Under the pieces are notes generated by a model. It was given only the letters and a program-made list of their open reading frames with translations, searched no databases and was not told where the DNA came from. A DNA stretch of 63,995 nucleotides, the filler included, from Octopus bimaculoides (lineage: Eukaryota): NCBI RefSeq assembly GCF_001194135.2. It is 5 parts of 4 records of this genome, joined end to end, with 100 filler letters (N's around TTAATTAATTAA, not from the genome) between each part and the next. Parts side by side here need not be neighbours in the genome. Positions count along the whole stretch, not along the records: positions 43,424 to 55,347 come from NC_069004.1; 4 more parts are not named here. One strand, 5' to 3'. The translations under genes and the position numbers were made by a program. Positions 43,424 to 55,347 of the stretch are shown here, piece by piece. The stretch's first letter is position 1. The number at the start of each line of letters is the position of its first letter.

Positions 43424-43455
<32 letters not shown>

Positions 43456-44032
43456 ATATATAAATATATATGTGTGTATATATATATAAATATATATGTG
43501 TGTATATATATATAAATATATATGTGTGTATATATATATAAATATATGTGTGTATATATATATAAATATATGTGTGTATATATATATATAAATATATATA
43601 TGTGTGTATATATGTATATATATTATATAAATATGTATATATATGTATGCGTTTATATATATGTATATGTATATATACACACACATACAAACGCTTATAT
43701 ATTTATGCATGTACGTATGTATAATGATGCAGTTAGGCCTAATTTGTTTTCGCTTCCCTCTACTTAGCAATACGGTTCGTTATATTATTTTAAACTTCTT
43801 GTCAACACCGCATTATCAATTTCCGCTCTCTCGGTCGACCACGTTAAATCTGGGTGTGTATGTGTGTACACAAATAAAAACTCCCAGTAATATTAACATA
43901 TATTTTTTCAAGCTGTTTCAAATATTTCCCTATTATCTCAATTTATTTCATATTTCCTTATAATATTAACCAGTTTGCTTTTCTGATTTGCTACCATTCA
44001 TATTTAGAGTAAAACAATGATACGTACATGCA

Positions 44033-44077
<45 letters not shown>

Positions 44078-44078
44078 A

Positions 44079-44531
44079 GACTCGTGGTAAAGGTGTGTGT
44101 AGATGAACAGTGAATGATCTTGTCCTGCGGTTCAAGGGTTCGAGTCAGATCCGGGTGTAGGTAAGATTCTTGATTATTTATTTCTTTCATCAAAGACGTT
44201 TTAAAAAAGAAACTCCTTGACAATAGTTATATGTAGATAGGGATCGAAACCTCTACCTTCATAGAAGCTTAGTAATTAAATTACCAGCCCTCTTACCATC
44301 AAACCAACAATTGAAAAGTAGTTTAAAAATGAGATATTTAGATCTATTTATTTTTGATCAGACACTTTTATCGATTTAAGTAGCTCATGTTTGAGTGAAA
44401 GTGATAGACTCGCGGTAAAGGCGTTTGTAGATGAACAGTGTGAGATCGTGAACGATTTTGTCCTACGGTTCCAGGGTTCGAGATAGATCGGTGTGTAGGT
44501 AAGATTTTTTAATTTTTTTCTTCATCAAAGA
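44079..44531 (+). repeat. Two diverged copies (44079-44196, 44407-44531) of a ~120-bp unit with tRNA-like A/B-box motifs
   Basis: gactcg(t/c)ggtaaagg...gtagatgaacagtg...gggttcgag...gtgtaggtaagatt...ttcatcaaaga in both copies. Confidence 0.8.
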
Positions 44532-44631
44532 NNNNNNNNNNNNNNNNNNNNNNNNNNNNNNNNNNNNNNNNNNNNNNNNNNNNNNNNNNNNNNNNNNNNN
44601 NNNNNNNNNNNNNNNNNNNNNNNNNNNNNNN

Positions 44632-47600
44632 TTCTTTTGTTATTTCCTGCCTACGTAATACGTTCGTTCGTTCGTTCTTTCATACGTACGTTCATTCCTT
44701 CGTTCTTACGTTTTGACGTACGTACGTTGGTATTTGCGTTCTTTCGTTATTTCCTGCCTACGTAATACGTTCGTTCTTTCATTCTTTCCTGCCTACGTAA
44801 TACGTTTGTTCGTTCCTTCTTTCCTTCGTACGTTCGTTCCTTCGTACGTACGTTCGTTCGTACGTACGTTCGTACGTACGTTCGTTCGTTTTTACGTACG
44901 TTCTTTCGTTATTTCCTGCCTATGTAATACGTTCGTTCGTTCTTTCCTTCATACGTTCGTTCTTTCGCACGTACTTTCGTTTTTACGTACGTACGTTCGT
45001 TCTTACTTACGTTCTTTCTTCATTTCCTGCCAACGTAATACGCTCTTTCGTTCGGTGTTTCCTACTTCCGTTTGTTCATTCGTACGTACGTTCGTTCCTT
45101 CGTACGTACGTTTGTTTTTACGTACGTAGTTCGTACTTACGTCCTTTCGATATTTCCTGCCTACTTAATTTGTTCGTTCGTTCTTTCTTTCGTACGTTCG
45201 TTCCTTCGTACGTACGTTCGTTCTTTCTTACTTACGTTCTTTCGTTATTTCCTGCCTACGTAATACGTTCGTTCGTTCTTTCCTTCGTACGTTCGTTCCT
45301 TCTTACGTACGTTCTTTCGTACCTACGTTCGTTCGTTTTTACGTACGTTCTTTCGTTATTTCCTGCCTATGTAATACGTTCGAACGTTCGTTCTTTTCTT
45401 CGTACGTTTTTACGTACGTACGTTCGTTCTTACGTTCTTTCGTTATTTCCTGCCTACGTAATATTTCGTTCATTCGTTGTTTCCTTCGTACGTACGTTCG
45501 TTCGTGTTTACGTACGTTCTTTCGTTATTTCCTGCCTACGTAATACGTTCGTTCGTTCGTTCTTTCCTTCGTACGTTCGTTCCTTCTTACGTACGTTCGT
45601 TCGTTCGTTTTTACGTACGTTCCTTCGTTATTTCCTGCCTACGTACTACAATCGATCGTCCGTTCTTTCCTTCGTATGTACGTTCGTTTTTACGTACGTT
45701 CGTTCTTAAGTTTTTCGTTATTTCCTGCCTACGTAATACATTCGTTCGTTCGTTCTTTCCTTCGTACGTTCGTTCCTTCTTACGTACGTACCTTCGTTCG
45801 TTTTTACGTACGTTCTTTTCTGCCTACGTAATACGTTCGTTCGTTCTGCCTACGTAATACGTTCTGCCTACGTAATACGTTCGTTCGTTCTTTCCTTCCT
45901 ACGTTCGTTCATTCGTACGTACGTTCGTTCTTTCGTTATTTCCTGCCTACGTAATATGCACGTTCGTTTGTTCTTTCCTTCGTACGTACGTTCGTTCGTT
46001 TTTACATACGTTCTTTCGTCATTTCCTGCCTACGTAATACGTTCGTTCGTTCGTTCTTTCATCCGTACGTTCATTCCTTCGTTCTTACGTTTTGACGTAC
46101 GTACGTTGGTATTTGCGTTCTTTCGTTATTTCCTGCCTACGTAATACGTTCGTTCGTTCGTTGTCTCCTTCGTCCGTTCGTTCCCTCGTACGTACGTTCG
46201 TTCGTTTTTACGTACGTACGTTCGTTCGTTTTTACGTACGTACGTTCTTACTTACGTTCTTTCGTCATTTCCTGCCTACGTAATACGTTGGTTCGTTCAT
46301 TCTTTCCTGCCTACGTAATCCGTTTGTTCGTTCCTTCTTTCCTTCGTACGTTCGTTCCTTCGTACGTACGTTCGTTCGTACGTACGTTCGTACGTACGTT
46401 CGTTCGTACGTACGTTCGTTCGTACGTTCGTTCGTTTTTACGTACGTTCTTTCGTTATTTCCTGCCTATGTAATACGTTCGTTCGTTCTTTCCTTCGTAC
46501 GTTCGTTCCTTCGCACGTACGTTCATTCCTTTATACGTACGTTAGTTTTAACGTACGTACGTTCGTTCTTACTTACGTTCTATCTTCATTTCCTGCCTAC
46601 GTAAAACTCTCTTTCGTTCGTTCTTTCCTACGTCCGTTTGTTCATTCGTACGTACGTTCGTTCCTTCGTACGTACGTTCGTTCCTTCGTACGTACGTTTG
46701 TTTTTACGTACGTAGTTCGTACTTACGTCCTTTCGTTATTTCCTGCCTACGTAAAATGTTCGTTTGTTCTTTCTTTCGTAGTTCGTTCCTTCGTACGTAC
46801 GTTTGTTCGTACATACGTACGTTCGTTTTTACGTACGTACGTCGTTCGTTCTTACTGACGTTCTTTCGTTATTTCCTGCCTACGAAATACGTTCGTTCGT
46901 TCTTTCCTTTGTACGTTCGTTCCTTCTTACGTACGTTCGTTCGTTTTTACGTACGTTCTTTCGTTATTTCNNNNNNNNNNCCTGCCTACGTAATACGTTT
47001 GTTCGTTCGTTCTTTCCTTCGTACGTACGTTCGTTCGTTTTTACGTACGTTCTTTCGTTATTTCCTGCCTACGTAATACGTTTGTTCGTTCGTTCTTTCC
47101 TTCGTACGTACAATCGTTCGTTTTTACGTACGTTCTTTCGTTATTTTCTGCCTACGTGATACGTTTGTTCGTTCGTTCTTTCCTTCCTACGTTCGATCGT
47201 TCGTTTTTACGTACGTTCTTTCGTTATTTCCTGCCTACATAATACGTTCATTCGTTCTTTCTTTCGTACGTACGTTCGTTCGTTATTTCCTGCCTACGTA
47301 ATACGTTTGTTCGTTCGTTCTTTCCTTCGTACGTTCCTTCCTACTTCCGTACGTTTGTTCCTTCTTCTGTACGTTCATTCGTACCTACGTTCGTTTTTAC
47401 GTACGTTCTTTCGATATTTCCTGCCTTTGTAATACGTTCGATCGTTCGTTCTTTCCTTCGTACGTTCGTTCTTTCGTTATTTCCTGCCGACGTAATATGC
47501 ACGTTCCTTCGTTCTTTCCTTCGTACGTACGTTCGTTCGTTTTTACATACGTTCTTTCGTTATTTCCTGCCTACATAATACGTTCGTTCGTTCTTTCATT

Positions 47601-50600
47601 CGTACGTTCATTCCTTTGTTCTTACGTTTTGACGTACGTACGTTGGTATCTGCGTTCTCTCTTTATTTCCTGCCTACGTAATACGTTCGCTCGTTCGTTG
47701 TTTCCTTCGTCCGTTCGTTCCCTCGTACGTACGTTCGTTCGTTGTTACGTACGTACGTTCGTTCGTACGTACGTTCTTACTTACGTTCTTTCGTTATTTC
47801 CTGCCAAAGTAATACGTTCGTTCGTTTATTCTTTCCTGCCTACGTAATACGTTTGTTCGTTCCTTCTTTCCTTCGTACGTTCGTTTCTTCGTACGTTCGT
47901 TCGTTCGTACGTACGTTCGTTCGTTTTTACGTACGTTCTTTCGTTTTTTCCTGCCTACGTAATACTTTCGTTCGACCTTTCCTTCGTACGTTCGTACCTT
48001 TGTTTTTACGTACGTACGTTCGTTCTTTCTTCATTTCCTGTCTGCGTAATACGCTCTTTCGTTCGTTCTTTCCTACGTCCGTTTGTTCATTCGTACGTCC
48101 GTTCGTTCCTTCGTACGTACGTTTGTTTTTACGTACGTAGTTCGTACTTACGTCCTTTCGCTATTTCCTGCCTACGTAATATGTTCGTTCGTTCTATCTT
48201 TCGTACGTTCGTTCCTTCGTACGTACGTTCTTTTCGTACATACGTTCGTTCGTACGTACGTTCGTTCGTTTTTACGTACGTACGTTCGTTCTTACTTACG
48301 TTCTTTCGTTATTTCCTGCCTACGTAATACGTTCGTTCGTTCGTTCGTTCTTTCATTCGTACTTTCGTTCCTTCTTACGTACGTTCGTTCGTACCTACGT
48401 TCGTTCCTTTTTACGTATGTTCTTTCCTTATTTCCTGCCTATGTAATACGTTCGATCGTTCGTNNNNNNNNNNNNNNNNNNNNNNNNNNNNNNNNNNNNN
48501 NNNNNNNNNNNNNNNNNNNNNNNNNNNNNNNNNNNNNNNNNNNNNNNNNNNNNNNNNNNNNNNNNNNNNNNNNNNNNNNNNNNNNNNNNNNNNNNNNNNN
48601 NNNNNNNNNNNNNNNNNNNNNNNNNNNNNNNNNNNNNNNNNNNNNNNNNNNNNNNNNNNNNNNNNNNNNNNNNNNNNNNNNNNNNNNNNNNNNNNNNNNN
48701 NNNNNNNNNNNNNNNNNNNNNNNNNCGTTCTTTCATTCGTACGTTCATTCCTTCGTTCGTAAGTTTTGACGTACGTACGTTGGTATTTGCGTTCTTTCGC
48801 TATTTCCTGCCTACGTAATACGTTCGTTCATTCGTTGTTTCCTTCGTCCGTTCGTTCCCCCGTACGTACGTTCGTTCGTTTTTACGTACGTACGTTCGTA
48901 CGTAAGTTATTACTTACGTACTTTCGTTATTTCCTGCCTACGTAATACGTTCGTTCGTTTATTCTTTCCTGCCTACGTAATACGTTTGTTCGTTCCTTCT
49001 TTCCTTCGTACGTTCGTTTCTTCGTACGTACGTTCGTTCGTACGTACGTCCGTTCTTATTTACGTTCTTTCGTTATTTCCTGCCTACGTAATACGTTCGT
49101 TCGTTCGTTATTTCCTTCGTACGTTCGTTCCTTCTTACGTACGTTCGTTCGTACCTACGTTCGTTCCATTTTACGTATGTTCTTTCGTTATTTCCTGCCT
49201 ATGTAATACGTTCGATCGTTCGTTCTTTCCTTCGTACGTACGTTCCTTTTTACTTACGTACGTTCGTTCTTACGTTCTTTCGTTATTTCCTGACTACGTA
49301 ATACGTTCGTTCGTTCATTCTTTCCTTCGTACGTTCGTTCCTTCTTACGTACGTTCTTTCGTACCTACGTTCGTTCGTTCGTTCATTCCTTCCAACGTTC
49401 GTTCCTTCGTACTTTCGTTTGTTCGTACGTACGTTCGTTCTTTCGTTATTTCTTGCCTACGTAATACGTTCGTTCGTTCGTTCTTTCATTCGTTGTTTCC
49501 TTCGTCCGTTCGTTCCCCCGTACGTACGTTCGTTCGTTTTTACGTACGTACGTTCGTTCGTACGTAAGTTATTACTTACGTTCTTTCGTTATTTCCTGCC
49601 TACGTAATACGTTCGTTCGTTCCTTCTTTCCTTCGTACGTTCGTTCCTTCATACGTACGTTTGTTTTTACGTACGTAGGTCGTAATTACGTCCTTTCCTT
49701 ATTTCCTGCCTTCGTAATATGTTCGTTCGTTCTATCTTTCGTACGTTCGTTCCTTCGTACGTAGTTCGTTCTTACGTACGTTCGTTCTTACTTACGTTCT
49801 TTCGTTATTTCCTGCCTACGTAATACGTTCGTTCCTTCTTACGTACGTTCGTTCGTACCTACGTTCGTTCGTTTTTACGTACGTTCTTTCGTTATTTCTT
49901 GCCTACGTAATACGTTCGATCGNNNNNNNNNNTCGTTATTTCCTGCCTACGTAATACGTTCGTTCCTTCTTACGTACGTTCGTTCGTTTTTACGTACGTT
50001 CTTTCGTTATTTCTTGCCTACGTAATACGTTCGATCGTTCGGTCTTTCCTTCGTACGTACGTACGTTCATTCGTACTTTCATTTGTTTTCACGTACGTAC
50101 GTTCGTTCTTTCTTTATTTCCTGCCTACGTAATACGTTCGTTCGTTCTTTCCTTCGTGCGTTCGTTCCTTCGTACGTACGTTCGTTCTTACTTACGTTAT
50201 TTCGTTATTTCCTGCCTACGTAATACGTTCGTTCGTTCCTTTGTACGTTCGTTCCTTCTTCCGTACGTTCGTTCGTTGTTACGTACGTTCTTTCGTTATT
50301 TTCTGCCTACGTGATACGTTTATTCGTTCGTTCTTTCCTTCCTACGTTCGTTCGTTCGTTTTTACGTACGTTCTTTCGTTATTTCCTGCCTACGTAATAC
50401 GTTTGTTCGTTCATTCTTTCCTTCGTTCGTTTTTACGTACGTTCTTTCGTTATTTTCTGCCTACGTGATACGTTTGTTCGTTCGTTGTTTCCTTTCTACG
50501 TTCGTTCGTTTTTACGTACGTTCTTTCGTTATTTCCTGCCTACGTAATACGTTTGTTCGTCCTTTCCTTCGTACGTACGTTCGTTCGTTTTTACGTACGT

Positions 50601-53600
50601 TCTTTCGTTATTTCCTGCCTACGTAATACGTTTGTTCGTTCGTTCTTTTCTTCGTACGTACGTTCGATCGTTTTTACGTACGTTCTTTCGTTATTTCCTG
50701 CCTACGTAATACGTTTGTTCGTTCGTTCTTTCCTTCCTACGTTCGTTCGTTCGTTCTTTCCTTCCTACGTTCGTTCGTACGTTCGTTCGTTTTTACGTAC
50801 GTAAGTTCGTTCGTAACTACGTCCGTTCGTATGTACGTTCTTACTTACGTTCTTTCATTATTTCCTGCCTACGTAATACGTTCGTTCGTTCCTTCTTTCC
50901 TTCGTACGTTCGTTCGTTTTTACGTACGTTCTTTCGTTATTTCCTGCCTTTGTAATACGTTCGATCGTTCGTTCTTTCATTCGTACGTACGTTCGTTCGT
51001 AATGTTCATTCGTTTTTACGTACGTACGTTCGTTCTTACTTACGTTCTTTCGTAATTTCCTGCCTACGTAATATGTTCGTTCGTTCTTTCCTTCGTACGT
51101 ACGTTCGTTCGTTCTTTCGTTTTTACGTACATTCTTTCGTTATTTCCTGCCTACGTAATACGTTCGATCGTTCGTCCTTTCCTTCGTACGTTCGTTCGTT
51201 CGTACGTTCATTCGTCTTTACGTACGTACGTTCGTTCTTACTTACGTTCTTTCTTATTTCCTGCCCACGTAGTACGTTCGTTCGTTCGTTCTTTCCTTCG
51301 TATGTTCGTACGTACGTTCGTTCCTTCGAAGGTACGTTTGTTTTTAAGTACGTACGTTCGTACTTACGTCCTTTCGTTAATTCCTGCCTACGTAATATGT
51401 TCGTTCGTTGTTTCCTTCGTACATTCGTTCCTTCGTACGTACGTTCGTTCTTTCGTACGTTCGTTCGTTTTTGCGTACGTTCGTTCGTTCTTACTTACGT
51501 TCTTTCGTTATTTCCTGCCTACGTAATATGTTCGTTCGTTCGTTCATTCCTTCGTACGTACGTTCGTTCGTTTTTACGTACGCTCTTTCGTTATTTCCTG
51601 CCTACGTAATACGTTCGTTCGTTCTTTCCTTTGTACGTTCGTTCATTCTTACGTACGTTCGTTGTTTCGTACGTTCTTTCGTTATTTCCTGCCTACGTAA
51701 TACGATCGATCGTTCTTTCCTTCATACGTACGTTCGTTCTTACGTTCTATCGTTATTTGCTGCCTACATAATACGTTCGTTCGTTTTTACGTACGTTCTT
51801 TCGTTATTTTCTGGCTACGTAATACGTTCGTTCGTTCTTTCCTTCCTACGTTCGTTTCTTCGTACGTACGTTTTTTCGTACGTACGTTCGTTCGTCTTTA
51901 CGTATGTACGTTCGTTCTTTCCTGCCTACGTAATACGTTCGTGCGTTGGTTTTTTCCTTCGTCCGTTCGTACCCTCGTACGTACGTTCGTTCGTTTTTAC
52001 GTACGTAAGTTCGTTCGTACCTACGTCCGTTCGTACGTACGTTCTTACTTACGATCTTTCGTTATTTCCTGCCTACGTAAGTTCGTTCGTTCCTTCTTTC
52101 CTTCGTACGTTCGTTCGTTCCTATGTACGTTCGTTCGTTATTTCCTGTCTACCTAATACGTTCGTTTGTTCTTTCCTTCGTACGTTCGTTCATACTTACG
52201 TTCTTTCTTTATTTCCTGCCTACGTAATACGCTCCTTCGTTCATTCTTTCCTACGTCCGTTTGTTCATTCGTACGTACGTTCATTCCCTCGTACGTACGT
52301 TTGTTTTTACGTACGTAGTTCGTACTTACGTCCATTCCTTATTTCCTGCCTACGTAATATGTTCGTTCGTTCTTTCCTTCGTACGTACGTTCGTTCCTTC
52401 GTACGTACGTTCGTTCGTACGTTCGTTCGTTCGTTCTTACTTACGTTCTTTCGTTATTTCCTGCCTACGTAATATGTTCGTTCGTTCGTGTTTACGTACG
52501 ATCTTTCGTTATTTCCTACCTACGTAAAACGTCGTTCGTTCGTTCTTTCGTTCGTACGTTCGTTCCTTCTTACGTACGTTCGTTCGTACCTACGTTCGTT
52601 CGTTTTTACGTATGTTCTTTCGTTATTTCCTGCCTATGTAATACGTTCGATCATTCATTCTTTCCGTCGTACGTACGTTCGTTCTTTCCTTCGTACGTTC
52701 GTTCCTTATTACGTACGTTCGTTCGTACGTTCGTTCGTTTTTACCTACGTTTTACGTTCGTTCGTTCTTTCCTTTCCACGTTCGTTCCTTCATACCTTCG
52801 TTTGTTCGTTCCTTCGTACGTACGTTTTTTCGTACGTACGTTCGTTCGTTTTTACGTACGTACGTTCGTTCTTTCCTGCCTACGTAATACGTTCGTTCGT
52901 TGGTTTTTTTCCTTCGTCCGTTCGTTCCTCCTTACGTAAGTTCGTTCGTACCTATGTTCGTTCGTTTTTACGTACGTTCTTTCGTTTTTTCCTGCCTTTG
53001 TAATACGTTCGATCGTTTGTTCTTTCCTTCGTACGTACGTTTGTTCGTTCGTTTTTACGTACGCACGTTTGTTTTTACTTACGTTCTTTCATTATTTCCT
53101 GCCTACGTAATACGTCCGTTCGTTCGTTCTTTCCTTCGTACGCTCGTTCCTTCGTACGTACGTTCGTTTTTACGTACGTACGTTCGTACTTACGTTCTTT
53201 CGTCATTTCCTGCCTACGTAATATGTTCGTTTGTTCTTTCCTTCGTTCGTACGTTCGTTCGTCTTTATGTACGTTCTTTCGTTATTTTCTGCCTACGTAT
53301 TACGTTCGTTCGTTCGTTCTTTCCTTCGTACGTTCGTTTGTTCATACGTACGTACGTTCGTTTTTACGTACGTACGTTCGTTATTTCCTGCCTACGTAAT
53401 ACGTTCGTTCGTTTCTTCTTTCCTTGGTACGTTCGTTCCTTCGTACGTACGTTCGATCGTACCTACGTTCGTTCGTACGTTCGTTCGTTGTTTCGTACGT
53501 TCTTTCGTTATTTCCTGCATACGAAATACGTTCGATCGTTCGTTCTTTCCTTCGTACGTACGTTCGTTCGTAAGTTCATTCGTTTTTAGGTACGTACGTT

Positions 53601-54723
53601 CGTTTGTTCTTCCATTCGTACGTTCGTTCCTTCGTACGTTCGTTCCTTCGTACGTACGTTCATTCGTACCTACGTTCGTTCGTTTTTACGTATGTACCTT
53701 CGTTCTTACTTACGTTCTTTCGTTATTTCCTGCCTACGTAATACGTTCGTTCGTTCTTTCCTTCTTACGTACGTTCGTTCGTTTTTACGTACGTTCTATC
53801 GTTACTTTTTGCCTACGTAATACGTTCGTTCGTTTGTTCTTTCCTTCGTACGTTCGTTCCTTCGTACGTACGTTCGTTCCTTCGTACGTACGTTCCTTCG
53901 TTTTTACGTACGTACGTTCGTTCTTACTTACGTTCTTTCGTCATTTCCTGCCTACGTAATACGTTCGTTCTTACTTACGTTCTTTCGTCATTTCTTGCCT
54001 ACGTAATACGTTCGTTCCTTCGTATGTACGTTCGTTCGTACGTTCGTTCGTTTTTACGTACGTACGTTTGTTCTTACGTACGCTCTTTCCTTATTTCCTG
54101 CCTTCGTAATACGTTCGTTCGTTCTTTCGTTATTTCCTGCCCACGTAATACGTTCGTTCTTTCCATCGTACGTCCGTTCATTTGTGCGTACGTTCGTTCG
54201 TACGTTCGCTCGTTCGTACGTCCGTCCATTTGTGCGTACGTTCGTTCGTACGTTCGTTCGGTCCTTCCTTCGTTCCTTCCTACGTACGTTCGTTCGTTCG
54301 GTCGTAAGTTCGTACGTACGTTAATTCGTTTGTTTGTTTGTTCGTACTTATGTTCGTTCATTCTTTCGTTTGTTCGTTTGTACGTTATTTCCTACCTACG
54401 TACGTACGCACATTCCTTCGTTCGTTCGTTTGTTCCTTCGTTCGTACGCATTTACGTACGTATGTTCGATTGTACATTCGTTTGTTCAATCGTTCTTTCG
54501 TTCGTACGTTCGGTTGTTCGATCGTACGTATGTTCCTTCGATCGTTCGTTGGTTCGTTTGTCCATTCGTACGTACGTACGTTCGTTTGGTCGTTCCTACG
54601 TACGTATGTACGTATGTTCGTTCGTTCCTTTGTTCGTACAAACGTACGTACGCACGTATTTTCGTTCGTTGGCACGAACGTAACTACGTACGTACGTTCG
54701 TTCGTTCTTTTGAAAGAACGAAC
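44632..54723. repeat. ~10 kb CpG-rich complex satellite: conserved motif ttctttcgttatttcctgcctacgtaatacg separated by variable TTCG/TACG/TTCC spacers
   Basis: About 12 motif copies in the first 1.1 kb, so roughly 100 in total (estimate). The plus strand is strongly T/C-rich. Three internal gaps. Confidence 0.97.
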
Positions 54724-55300
54724 AAACTTCATACAAATGTAGAGCAAGAGGTAAAAACAGAGGTGTGGTAGAGACCAGAAGAAAAACAACAGCAAAAATA
54801 AGATAGAAATAAAAATAAAAAATAGAATGAAAATCAAAATCAAAATTATAATAATGGTACAGCAGGAAAAAAAAACAATAATAATAATAATAAAGAATAC
54901 ATAAATTAAAAATGAAGGTATAGCATGTGGGACATACAAAAATATAAAAAAGATATATGTCAAGGCACACAAAGAGCCTACAAATATTATAAATAGGTAG
55001 CTATAGACACTTCAATGCACATATATATATGTGTGGGTTCGTGTGCACAGCCTTACTCGGATGTCCCCTTACTCCCATGTGTGCATATACAAGTTTTTAT
55101 AAGCAAACATTCCACCACATACGTTGTTTGTGGCATCAGCGCTATTAGACGTATCTAGAAAGCTGTAAGTGTTTTTTAGAAAGGAAGTTTTGTTGAGTGT
55201 GTGTGTGCCATTTCTATATATATTGGAAGGTTCTATGTAGAAGTTCATTTTATAAAGTTATTAATGTTCTAGTAGCAATAACATATACATACATACATAT

Positions 55301-55347
<47 letters not shown>

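What the first reader, a model, noticed from the sequence alone, without database searches (positions are those of the whole stretch)
44632..54723. ~10 kb CpG-dense satellite with a conserved motif and combinatorial tetramer spacers
Seen: a ~30-nt motif (ttctttcgttatttcctgcctacgtaatacg) recurs about every 90 bp. The intervening DNA is a variable string of TTCG/TACG/TTCC/TTTT tetramers. CpG occurs every few bases although much of the window is CpG-poor, and one strand is T/C-rich throughout. I do not recognise this satellite. Inference: a large structured array like this could be a centromeric, subtelomeric or other heterochromatic satellite, or a dense protein-binding platform. The invariant CTACGTAAT resembles the PAR-bZIP site TTACGTAA, and methyl-CpG or CXXC readers are also plausible. 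True length is unknown because the array starts at a 100-N gap.
Basis: partly seen in the sequence, partly recalled or inferred. Interest (0 to 1): 0.75.

Follow-up and report, generated by a model that had tools for sequence, protein, structure and literature searches.

The report
Uncatalogued CpG-rich tetramer-lattice satellite array
This is a real tandem-repeat (satellite) array of at least 10 kb, built on a 4-base CGTT/CGTA lattice with one non-lattice "anchor" per ~100-bp unit; ordinary slippage and unequal exchange explain its look, and nothing in the sequence shows a special function.

Summary
93 anchors (CCTGCCTACGTAAT, ≤2 mismatches), all on the + strand, lie between 44646 and 54136. 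A composition-matched null gives 0.06. CpG o/e is 3.27 (139 CpG/kb) and the + strand is 71% T+C.

- Median unit length is 103 nt (range 18–246), not ~90.
- CTACGTAAT is intact in only 60 of 93 anchors.
- The spacers are not combinatorial. Every unit is a collinear variant of one template, differing by tetramer-module gain or loss. 71 of 89 gap-free unit lengths are 4k+3, and 30 of 46 indels are multiples of 4.
- The anchor is no better conserved than the alignable spacer (7.9% vs 7.4% divergence). Its tokens sit within 0–1 substitution of lattice tokens.
- The left 4.6 kb holds 3–4 imperfect copies of a ~1.5 kb higher-order block. The last 565 bp is an anchorless, more decayed edge.
- There is no canonical PAR-bZIP site (RTTAYGTAAY: 0 matches).
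- The long ORFs are compositional artefacts.

Gap 3 is flanked by redundant sequence, probably unmerged contig ends. Gaps 1 and 2 may hide whole units.

No relative was found in any accessible collection or paper, and the host organism could not be identified.

Verdict: a new member of a known kind, namely a microsatellite-derived satellite DNA. Interest is low to moderate.

The parts
44632..54140 (+). Core of the satellite array: 93 anchors, about 92 units of 18–246 nt (median 103). Each unit is a 31-nt anchor region (TTCTTTCGTTATTTCCTGCCTACGTAATACG) plus an in-phase string of CGTT/CGTA/CTTT/CCTT tetramers.
44737..44767 (+). Example of one complete 31-nt anchor (14-mer core at 44753–44766). 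In lattice phase it reads CTTT CGTT ATTT CCTG CCTA CGTA ATA. The single 3-nt token ATA makes unit lengths 4k+3.
44646..46024 (+). Higher-order block copy 1 (units 0–15, 1379 bp).
   Evidence: unit identities to copy 2 along the register are 0.99, 0.94, 0.81, 0.81, 0.82 … 0.94 … 0.95, against a background mean of 0.62
46025..47565 (+). Higher-order block copy 2 (units 16–30, 1541 bp including gap 1).
47566..48463 (+). Higher-order block copy 3 (units 31–39), cut off by gap 2.
48726..49594 (+). Higher-order block copy 4, partial and rearranged (units 39-right to 46). To the right of this the block order breaks down into irregular segmental duplications.
54141..54705 (+). Degenerate, anchorless edge of the array. 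It has the same 4-nt CpG lattice (99% of CpG–CpG spacings are multiples of 4) but about twice the decay index: (TG+CA)/CG is 0.42 here and 0.23 in the core.
54696..54727 (.). 15-nt inverted repeat (GTTCGTTCGTTCTTT / AAAGAACGAACAAAC, 93% complementary, 2 nt apart) exactly at the right boundary of the array.
44532..44631 (.). 100-N scaffold gap. The left boundary of the array is not observed, so its true length is unknown.
46971..46980 (.). Gap 1 (10 N), inside an anchor (…ATTTC | N10 | CCTGCC…). Direct abutment would leave one extra C. By the higher-order register, the 'CGTT CGAT/CGAA CGTT…' unit type that follows this position in copies 1, 3 and 4 is absent exactly here, so one or more whole units may be missing.
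   Evidence: inference
48464..48725 (.). Gap 2 (262 N). The left side is the start of one unit type and the right side is the interior of another. By analogy with block copies 1 and 2, about 0.6–0.7 kb (7–8 units) could be missing. Continuity and phase are not resolvable.
   Evidence: inference
49802..50037 (.). Gap 3 (10 N at 49923–49932) with redundant flanks. 49802–49922 equals 49933–50037 at 105/105 aligned bases apart from one 16-nt indel. The match includes a 25-mer that occurs only at these two places. Most likely these are unmerged overlapping contig ends, or a very recent duplication, rather than missing sequence.

Best explanation
This is a non-coding satellite DNA array that grew out of a CpG-containing tetranucleotide microsatellite, (CGTT)n/(CGTA)n. 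A mutated patch of that lattice carries a 1-nt deletion, which produces the 3-nt token ATA.

A segment of about 80–110 nt containing one such patch was then amplified head-to-tail. Two ordinary processes have shaped the array since.
1. Replication slippage inside the tetramer runs adds or removes 4-nt modules. Hairpins formed by the self-complementary (CGTA)n blocks probably help this. The result is spacers of variable length that stay in phase.
2. Unequal exchange or segmental duplication copies single units and multi-unit blocks. This gives a partial ~1.5 kb higher-order repeat and a less homogenised, more decayed edge.

The anchor looks conserved only because it is not prone to slippage, not because it is under special constraint. 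High CpG density and strand asymmetry follow directly from the repeat unit.

Shown: the anatomy, phase rule, indel spectrum, collinearity, higher-order blocks, lack of coding signal, and equal divergence of anchor and spacer. Inferred: the evolutionary origin, the slippage and hairpin mechanism, and the absence of a sequence-specific function.
For: One orientation only, with 93 anchors against 0.06 expected, and no inverted self-similarity.

4-nt lattice: 91% of successive CpG spacings in the core are multiples of 4. TRF finds period-4 rows spanning the array.

Unit lengths are 4k+3 in 71 of 89 gap-free units (binomial p = 3e-27). 13 more are 4k+2, explained by shared 1-nt deletions. 30 of 46 indels between closest paralogues are multiples of 4.

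The token view shows one collinear template (anchor, then f2-4 t c Y1-2 f f c … u Y f t f a) with module copy-number changes.

Anchor tokens lie 0–1 substitution from lattice tokens. Anchor divergence is 7.95% and spacer divergence 7.41%. Columns flanking the detection 14-mer are conserved equally well.

Higher-order register identities are 0.8–0.99, against a background of 0.62. The edge is more decayed.

Single-stranded units fold into 7–11-bp (CGTA)n hairpins, with z from −1.4 to −4.9.

There is no coding signal. 92 of 122 + strand stop trinucleotides lie in anchors. The longest stop-free run is 358 codons, against 425 in an order-3 null. The only protein hits are generic (TTCN)n-microsatellite ORFs without anchor peptides.
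Against: Nothing in the sequence contradicts this reading, but 'no specific function' is a default and not a demonstrated negative.

CpG is strikingly well retained. CpG transitions are only about 1.5× other transitions per site, or about 2.7× in token counts. That could reflect protection or selection rather than youth and homogenisation.

The divergence comparison uses closest paralogues, and register shifts in the tetramer runs inflate it.

Genomic copy number, chromosomal location, chromatin state and host species are unknown. The order of units may be partly an assembly product, because there are four gaps, one of them with redundant flanks.
Confidence: 0.8

Rival explanations
1. It is a structural chromosomal satellite, either centromeric/pericentromeric or subtelomeric heterochromatin. 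Array size and homogenisation would be maintained because the locus recruits kinetochore or heterochromatin proteins.
For: The array is long, runs in one orientation, and has partial higher-order structure and a degenerate edge. That layout is typical of centromeric satellites, from established knowledge of alpha-satellite and other satDNAs. The array is also hard to assemble, with four gaps in 10 kb.
Against: Nothing specific supports it. Unit length varies widely (18–246 nt) rather than being fixed at nucleosome scale. No telomere repeats occur in the piece. The array ends in ordinary AT-rich, microsatellite- and SINE-bearing DNA within the piece. Copy number and location are unknown.
Confidence: 0.12
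2. It is a dense protein-binding platform. The anchor would be bound by a bZIP (PAR/NFIL3-type) factor, and/or the CpG lattice by CXXC or methyl-CpG readers, acting as a sink or nucleation site.
For: TACGTAAT contains a perfect GTAAT half-site and an ACGT core. CpG density is 139/kb, higher than typical CpG islands. There is no strong CpG-decay signature, which fits a hypomethylated state.
Against: The canonical site is absent (RTTAYGTAAY 0, TTACGTAA 1). 33 of 93 anchors carry mutations in CTACGTAAT. The anchor is no better conserved than the spacer. GC is 42%, which fails the usual CpG-island GC criterion.
Confidence: 0.08
3. The repeat family is real, but this particular arrangement (order, number of units, the ~1.5 kb periodicity) is partly an assembly mosaic of a collapsed or mis-joined repeat.
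For: There are three internal gaps plus one at the border. The flanks of gap 3 are 105/105 identical apart from a 16-nt indel, as expected from unmerged overlapping contig ends. Gap 1 falls exactly in an anchor, with a whole unit type missing by register. Blocks that are about 95% identical over 130–210 nt are difficult for short-read assemblers.
Against: Most units carry distinctive variants and lengths that would allow unique placement. The higher-order copies differ by many substitutions and 4-nt indels, so they are not identical. The lattice phase is maintained across thousands of bases.
Confidence: 0.3
4. It is the internal tandem-repeat region of a mobile element, such as a Helitron/Helentron-type or other repeat-carrying transposon, rather than a free-standing satellite.
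For: Such elements are known to seed satellites in molluscs (general knowledge). There is a short inverted repeat at the right boundary.
Against: No transposase or Rep-helicase ORF, or other TE hallmark, is present in the 1.1 kb and 0.6 kb flanks. The left boundary is hidden by the gap. The 10 kb length far exceeds typical TE-internal arrays.
Confidence: 0.05
5. It encodes a repetitive protein (the + strand ORFs reach 354 aa).
For: Many + strand ORFs of 50–354 aa are listed.
Against: (CGTT)n and (CGTA)n have no stop codon in any frame. 92 of 122 + strand stop trinucleotides lie in anchors, and the longest stop-free run is shorter than in a composition-matched null. Unit lengths show no mod-3 preference (38/30/21). 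The only homologues are microsatellite-derived low-complexity ORFs.
Confidence: 0.01

Closest known systems
Classical satellite DNA with higher-order repeats (e.g. primate alpha satellite)
   Same: A head-to-tail array in one orientation. Non-adjacent units in a multi-unit register are much more alike (0.8–0.99) than neighbouring units (about 0.62). The array edge is degenerate.
   Different: Unit length is highly variable (18–246 nt) instead of fixed. The higher-order block is imperfect and confined to the left half. There is no sequence similarity. No evidence places it at a centromere.
Compound/degenerate tetranucleotide microsatellite, (AACG)n/(ACGT)n class
   Same: A strict 4-nt lattice, slippage-type indels in multiples of 4, and TRF period-4 rows across the whole array.
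   Different: A ~100-nt super-period is imposed on the lattice by a non-lattice anchor, and the total length of at least 10 kb is far beyond ordinary microsatellites.
Minisatellites/VNTRs with internal variant repeats (e.g. human MS32, CEB1)
   Same: Units of tens to about 100 nt with interspersed variants, evolving by slippage and unequal exchange or conversion.
   Different: Those are usually 0.5–several kb long and G-rich on one strand. Here the strand is T/C-rich with a CpG every 4 nt, and the array is at least 10 kb.
CpG-rich macrosatellites (D4Z4, DXZ4)
   Same: Tandem arrays that are islands of high CpG density in CpG-poorer surroundings.
   Different: Those units are kilobases long, GC-rich, contain genes or CTCF sites, and are vertebrate-specific. 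Here the units are about 100 nt, GC is 42%, and no such features are present.
PAR-bZIP / NFIL3 recognition site RTTAYGTAAY
   Same: The anchor contains ACGTAAT, which is one perfect half-site plus the ACGT core.
   Different: The other half-site is CC instead of RT. No exact consensus match exists anywhere in the array.

Membership tests
Satellite DNA (tandem non-coding array) | Head-to-tail repeats in a single orientation | tested here: met
   93 anchors on the + strand and 0 on the − strand. No minus-strand self hits.
Satellite DNA (tandem non-coding array) | Long uninterrupted array (kilobases or more) | tested here: met
   At least 10.07 kb, from 44632 to 54705, with the left end cut by a 100-N gap.
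Satellite DNA (tandem non-coding array) | No protein-coding capacity | tested here: met
   The ORFs are compositional. The only homologues are low-complexity microsatellite ORFs. No Rfam family reaches its gathering score.
Satellite DNA (tandem non-coding array) | High genomic copy number or heterochromatic location | not testable with these tools
   No reads, no full assembly and no eukaryotic repeat library are available. The anchor has 0 exact hits in the metagenome, prokaryote and viral collections.
Higher-order-repeat (HOR) satellite | Units in a multi-unit register are more similar than adjacent units | tested here: met
   Register identities are mostly 0.8–0.99, against an all-pairs mean of 0.62 (95th percentile 0.86), for block copies 1–4. 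Blocks about 95% identical lie at offsets of 1379–1586 bp.
Higher-order-repeat (HOR) satellite | Regular HOR period across the whole array | tested here: not met
   Mean identity by unit offset shows no consistent peak in the right half. Best-partner offsets are scattered. Units 11–14 and 27–29 are not collinear.
Tetranucleotide microsatellite-derived repeat | Persistent 4-nt phase and indels in multiples of 4 | tested here: met
   91% (core) and 99% (tail) of CpG spacings are multiples of 4. 30 of 46 indels are multiples of 4. Unit length is 4k+3 in 71 of 89 units.
Centromeric satellite | Association with CENP-A/kinetochore, one major locus per chromosome | not testable with these tools
   Requires ChIP/CUT&Tag, FISH or a chromosome-scale assembly.
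Subtelomeric repeat | Adjacency to telomeric repeats | tested here: not met
   0 TTAGGG/CCCTAA dimers in the 11.9-kb piece. This is weak evidence, because the piece is short and the host's telomere motif is only assumed.
PAR-bZIP binding-site array | Match to RTTAYGTAAY (palindromic TTACGTAA core) | tested here: not met
   RTTAYGTAAY 0 matches. TTACGTAA 1 match, at 52932 and not in an anchor. The anchor matches 8 of 10 positions.
PAR-bZIP binding-site array | The motif is more constrained than the surrounding repeat | tested here: not met
   Anchor divergence is 7.95% and spacer divergence 7.41%. CTACGTAAT is intact in 60 of 93 anchors.
CpG island (Gardiner-Garden & Frommer criteria) | CpG o/e >0.6 and GC ≥50% over >200 bp | tested here: not met
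   The o/e of 3.27 meets the criterion, but GC is only 0.42.

The most novel reading that the evidence does not exclude
The array is a germline-hypomethylated 'CpG-lattice' satellite with a chromosomal role. One possibility is that it is the centromeric or pericentromeric repeat of an invertebrate, possibly a cephalopod, whose centromere DNA is undescribed. Another is that it is a large sink for CXXC or bZIP proteins. In either case the anchor and the retained CpGs would be maintained by function rather than by turnover alone.
Probability: 0.08. Interest if true: 0.6.

Novelty: new member of a known kind. Interest (0 to 1): 0.25.

Why it matters
As it stands, the array mainly matters for annotation. 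It should be masked as a satellite, and its ORFs (up to 354 aa) should not be called as genes. The local assembly around the gaps should not be trusted.

It is also a clean example of how a satellite can arise from a tetranucleotide microsatellite. A 'conserved motif plus variable spacers' pattern can come from different slippage propensities rather than from selection. The 4k+3 length rule shows this directly.

If the host proves to be a lineage whose centromeric or heterochromatic repeats are unknown, and if the family is abundant, it would be a ready-made FISH or ChIP probe. Its unusual density of retained CpGs would also make it a convenient reporter of germline methylation state.

Tried and rejected
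1. Exact scans for the 21-nt anchor core in metagenome contigs, genome contigs and viral contigs gave 0 hits each.

2. I used the 354-aa array ORF as a handle in the 5.8-billion-protein collection. It returned 39 weak hits, all generic SFVRSF/SFIHSF microsatellite ORFs with no anchor-encoded peptides, and no self hit. No related locus was recovered, so I did not spend further protein searches.

3. I tried to identify the host through the SINE-like flank element. A 30-specified-base pattern gave 0 hits in the metagenome and genome collections. Sequence-string searches of papers for the anchor and the SINE gave nothing relevant.

4. Literature searches for cephalopod or mollusc satellites, centromeres and (AACG)n arrays found nothing describing this repeat.

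5. Rfam at E≤1 gave only sub-threshold miRNA-family hits on the AT/GT microsatellites and the (CGTA)n tail, all far below gathering scores. ARAGORN found no tRNA.

6. Permissive blastn self-alignment was uninformative, because everything aligns at about 75% at any offset. I replaced it with stringent scoring.

7. I rejected a coding reading, the canonical PAR-bZIP site, the 'combinatorial' spacer grammar, and strong methyl-CpG decay.
Full report
SCOPE. Only 43424–55347 was analysed. The piece consists of a 1.1-kb left flank, a 100-N gap (44532–44631), the array (44632–54705, with a boundary palindrome reaching 54727) and a 0.6-kb right flank.

The 14-mer CCTGCCTACGTAAT (≤2 substitutions) occurs 93 times between 44646 and 54136. 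All copies are on the + strand and none on the − strand, and 50 copies are exact. Order-1 Markov shuffles of the array give 0.06 occurrences. Even an order-4 model, which already encodes most of the repeat, gives 41. TRF reports period-4 rows (787 and 1352 copies at 63–64% matches) together with many rows of period 79–169.

Read in the phase set by the anchor, the spacers are 36% CGTT, 15.5% CGTA, 8% CTTT and 6% CCTT, and eight tokens account for 78%. CG starts 55% of tokens in that phase and ≤4% in the other three.

CpG o/e is 3.27 (1359 CpGs, 139 per kb), against 1.1 and 0.36 in the flanks. The + strand is 46% T, 25% C, 17% G and 12% A.

Three corrections apply. The period is not ~90: median and mean are 103 nt, the mode is 83 and the range is 18–246. 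CTACGTAAT is intact in only 60 of 93 anchors. The ungapped conserved stretch is about 60 nt, not 30.

2. ANATOMY.

(a) Phase rule. 71 of 89 gap-free unit lengths are 4k+3 (binomial p = 3e-27). 13 are 4k+2, and the token view traces these to shared 1-nt deletions, for example the variant …CGTACGTA-GTTCGTACTTACGTCC… in units 4, 21, 36, 47 and 75. The '+3' comes from the anchor. In lattice phase the anchor reads CTTT CGTT ATTT CCTG CCTA CGTA ATA, which is six tetramers plus one 3-nt token. Each of those tetramers is 0–1 substitution away from a lattice token. Across the core, 91% of successive CpG–CpG distances are multiples of 4.

(b) The spacers are collinear, not combinatorial. Written as tokens, nearly every unit follows one template: anchor, (CGTT)2–4, CTTT, CCTT, (CGTA)1–2, CGTT CGTT CCTT …, CGTT TTTA, (CGTA)1–2, CGTT, [CTTA CTTA CGTT], CTTT CGTT ATTT, next anchor. 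Differences are gains or losses of modules such as CGTA-CGTA-CGTT-CGTT. Between closest paralogues, 30 of 46 indels are multiples of 4, with 23 of length 4 and 6 of length 8.

(c) The anchor is not specially conserved. Divergence between closest paralogues is 7.95% in the 31-nt anchor and 7.41% in the alignable spacer. Columns outside the detection 14-mer, which carry no ascertainment bias, are conserved as well as those inside it.

(d) Higher-order structure. Stringent self-alignment finds blocks of 130–210 nt that are about 95–99% identical, at offsets of 1379–1586 bp in the left half. Marker units recur in the same order: A-type at idx 0/16/31/39, the 35-nt short unit at 1/18/33/41, C-type at 17/32/40/46, and D-type at 4/21/36/47/75. 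Identities along the register are mostly 0.8–0.99, against an all-pairs mean of 0.62 and a 95th percentile of 0.86. That makes three to four imperfect copies of a ~1.4–1.55 kb block (44646, 46025, 47566, 48726). Further right the order dissolves into irregular duplications and runs of 79–83-nt units.

(e) Edge. 54141–54705 keeps the lattice (99% of CpG spacings are multiples of 4) but has no anchors, and its decay index (TG+CA)/CG is 0.42 against 0.23 in the core. This is what an unhomogenised satellite edge should look like. The array ends at a 15-nt inverted repeat, 54696–54710 / 54713–54727.

(f) No inverted copies of the repeat exist.

Gap 3 (49923–49932). The 121 nt to its left and the 105 nt to its right are identical at 105 of 105 aligned positions apart from one 16-nt indel. 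They include the 25-mer CTTGCCTACGTAATACGTTCGATCG, which occurs only at 49898 and 50013. Most likely two contig ends overlap and were not merged, perhaps because of a heterozygous 4×4-nt indel, so about 110 bp is duplicated artificially. A very recent real duplication cannot be excluded.

Gap 1 (46971–46980). It lies inside an anchor (…ATTTC|N|CCTGCC…), and direct abutment would leave one surplus C. In the higher-order register, the 'CGTT-CGAT/CGAA-CGTT' unit type that follows this position in copies 1, 3 and 4 is missing exactly here, so one or more units may be hidden (inference).

Gap 2 (262 N). It separates the first ~30 nt of one unit type from the interior of an A-type unit. By analogy with copies 1 and 2, about 0.6–0.7 kb could be missing. 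Neither continuity nor phase can be established.

The left border gap hides the true start of the array.

4. WHAT IT IS NOT.

It is not coding. (CGTT)n and (CGTA)n have no stop codons in any frame. 92 of the 122 + strand stop trinucleotides lie in anchors, and the longest stop-free run (358 codons) is shorter than in an order-3 null (425). Unit lengths show no mod-3 preference. The 354-aa ORF finds only generic microsatellite-derived low-complexity proteins without anchor peptides.

It is not a known RNA family. No Rfam match comes near a gathering score, and no tRNA was found.

It is not a canonical PAR-bZIP array. RTTAYGTAAY has 0 matches and TTACGTAA has 1, outside any anchor.

It is not adjacent to telomere repeats within the piece.

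5. MECHANISM (best explanation, confidence 0.8).
The array is a microsatellite-derived satellite. The tetramer runs are prone to slippage, and the anchor is the one patch that is not a run of like tetramers and therefore cannot slip. The array therefore shows a 'constant motif' separated by 'variable spacers' without any need for selection on the motif.

The self-complementary (CGTA)n blocks give single-stranded units 7–11-bp hairpins (z from −1.4 to −4.9). This is a plausible, inferred aid to slippage. Unequal exchange or segmental duplication explains the higher-order blocks, near-identical neighbours (units 24/25 at 98%), the small 18-nt anchor triplet at 45842–45882 and the decayed edge.

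CpG density and T/C bias are properties of the unit.

CpG transitions are only about 1.5× as frequent per site as other transitions, and transversions are raised equally at CpG sites. In token counts, TGTT+CATT = 90 against CGTC+CGCT = 33, a ratio of about 2.7×. This is far from the roughly tenfold excess known for heavily methylated vertebrate DNA (established knowledge). So the array is either unmethylated in the germ line or turns over quickly. The estimate is noisy, because register shifts mimic substitutions and counts are cells rather than events. However, the host is not established.

6. RIVALS.
A structural (centromeric or heterochromatic) role (0.12) and a protein-binding platform (0.08) are not excluded but have no specific support. 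An assembly mosaic affecting unit order and number is a real possibility (0.3) given the gaps, and it is compatible with the main reading. A TE-internal array is unlikely (0.05) and coding is very unlikely (0.01).

7. COMPARISON AND NOVELTY.
It works like classical satDNA and minisatellites: slippage plus unequal exchange, with partial higher-order structure. It differs in having a strict 4-nt CpG lattice, the 4k+3 length rule and very variable unit length.

No match was found in any accessible collection or paper. These collections hold little eukaryotic DNA, and Dfam, Repbase and nt could not be searched. The claim is therefore only 'not found here'. I rate it a new member of a known kind, with interest 0.25.

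8. HOST.
The host was not identifiable. The flanks are AT-rich (GC about 0.30) and carry compound (TA/TG)n, (TC)n and (ATAC)n microsatellites and two copies of a SINE-like element. This fits an invertebrate metazoan genome, but a cephalopod origin is unverified.

Noticed in passing
window 44078–44196 and 44404–44531: Two dispersed copies, in the same orientation, of a ~125-nt element. Identity is 78% over the alignment, with long invariant blocks (TGTAGATGAACA, AGGGTTCGAG, GTGTAGGTAAGATT, CTTCATCAAAGA). It has a B-box-like GGTTCGAGTC and a D-arm-like TAGACTCGCGGTAAAGGCG, so it is probably a tRNA-derived SINE. The second copy is cut by the 100-N gap. ARAGORN and Rfam do not call a tRNA. A 30-base core pattern had 0 hits in the metagenome and prokaryote collections and in papers.
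   Followed up: partly
window 43424–43677: Compound microsatellite (TATATATATATAAATATATGTGTG)n with period 24–26 and about 10 copies. It is the source of the sub-threshold mir-297/mir-466/mir-3149 Rfam hits, which are low-complexity artefacts.
   Followed up: partly
window 44035–44073: Perfect (TC)19.5 microsatellite immediately upstream of the first SINE-like copy.
   Followed up: no
window 54696–54727 (and 54661–54690): Short strand-switch patches at the very end of the array: GTTCGTTCGTTCTTT / AAAGAACGAACAAAC, and CGTTCGTTGGCACGAACG. They could mark a fold-back or template-switch event at the array boundary.
   Followed up: partly
window 54724–54900 and 55285–55345: The right flank switches to a purine/A-rich low-complexity stretch with only 5 CpGs in 624 bp (o/e 0.36). 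It ends in (ATAC)n/(CA)n/(TA)n microsatellites at the edge of the piece.
   Followed up: no
window 45842–45882: Perfect 18-nt tandem triplet (CGTTCTGCCTACGTAATA ×2.3). It duplicates only the anchor core and uses the TCTGCC variant. This is a local micro-duplication with CGTT microhomology at the junctions.
   Followed up: no
protein collection, P0001–P0008: Public eukaryote-like gene predictions, some on contigs up to 1.5 Mb, carry C-terminal or internal SFVRSF/SFIHSF/SFLPSF tracts. These look like translated (TTCN)n microsatellites, so they are probably mis-annotated repeats. One JGI entry is even named as an ABC transporter.
   Followed up: no
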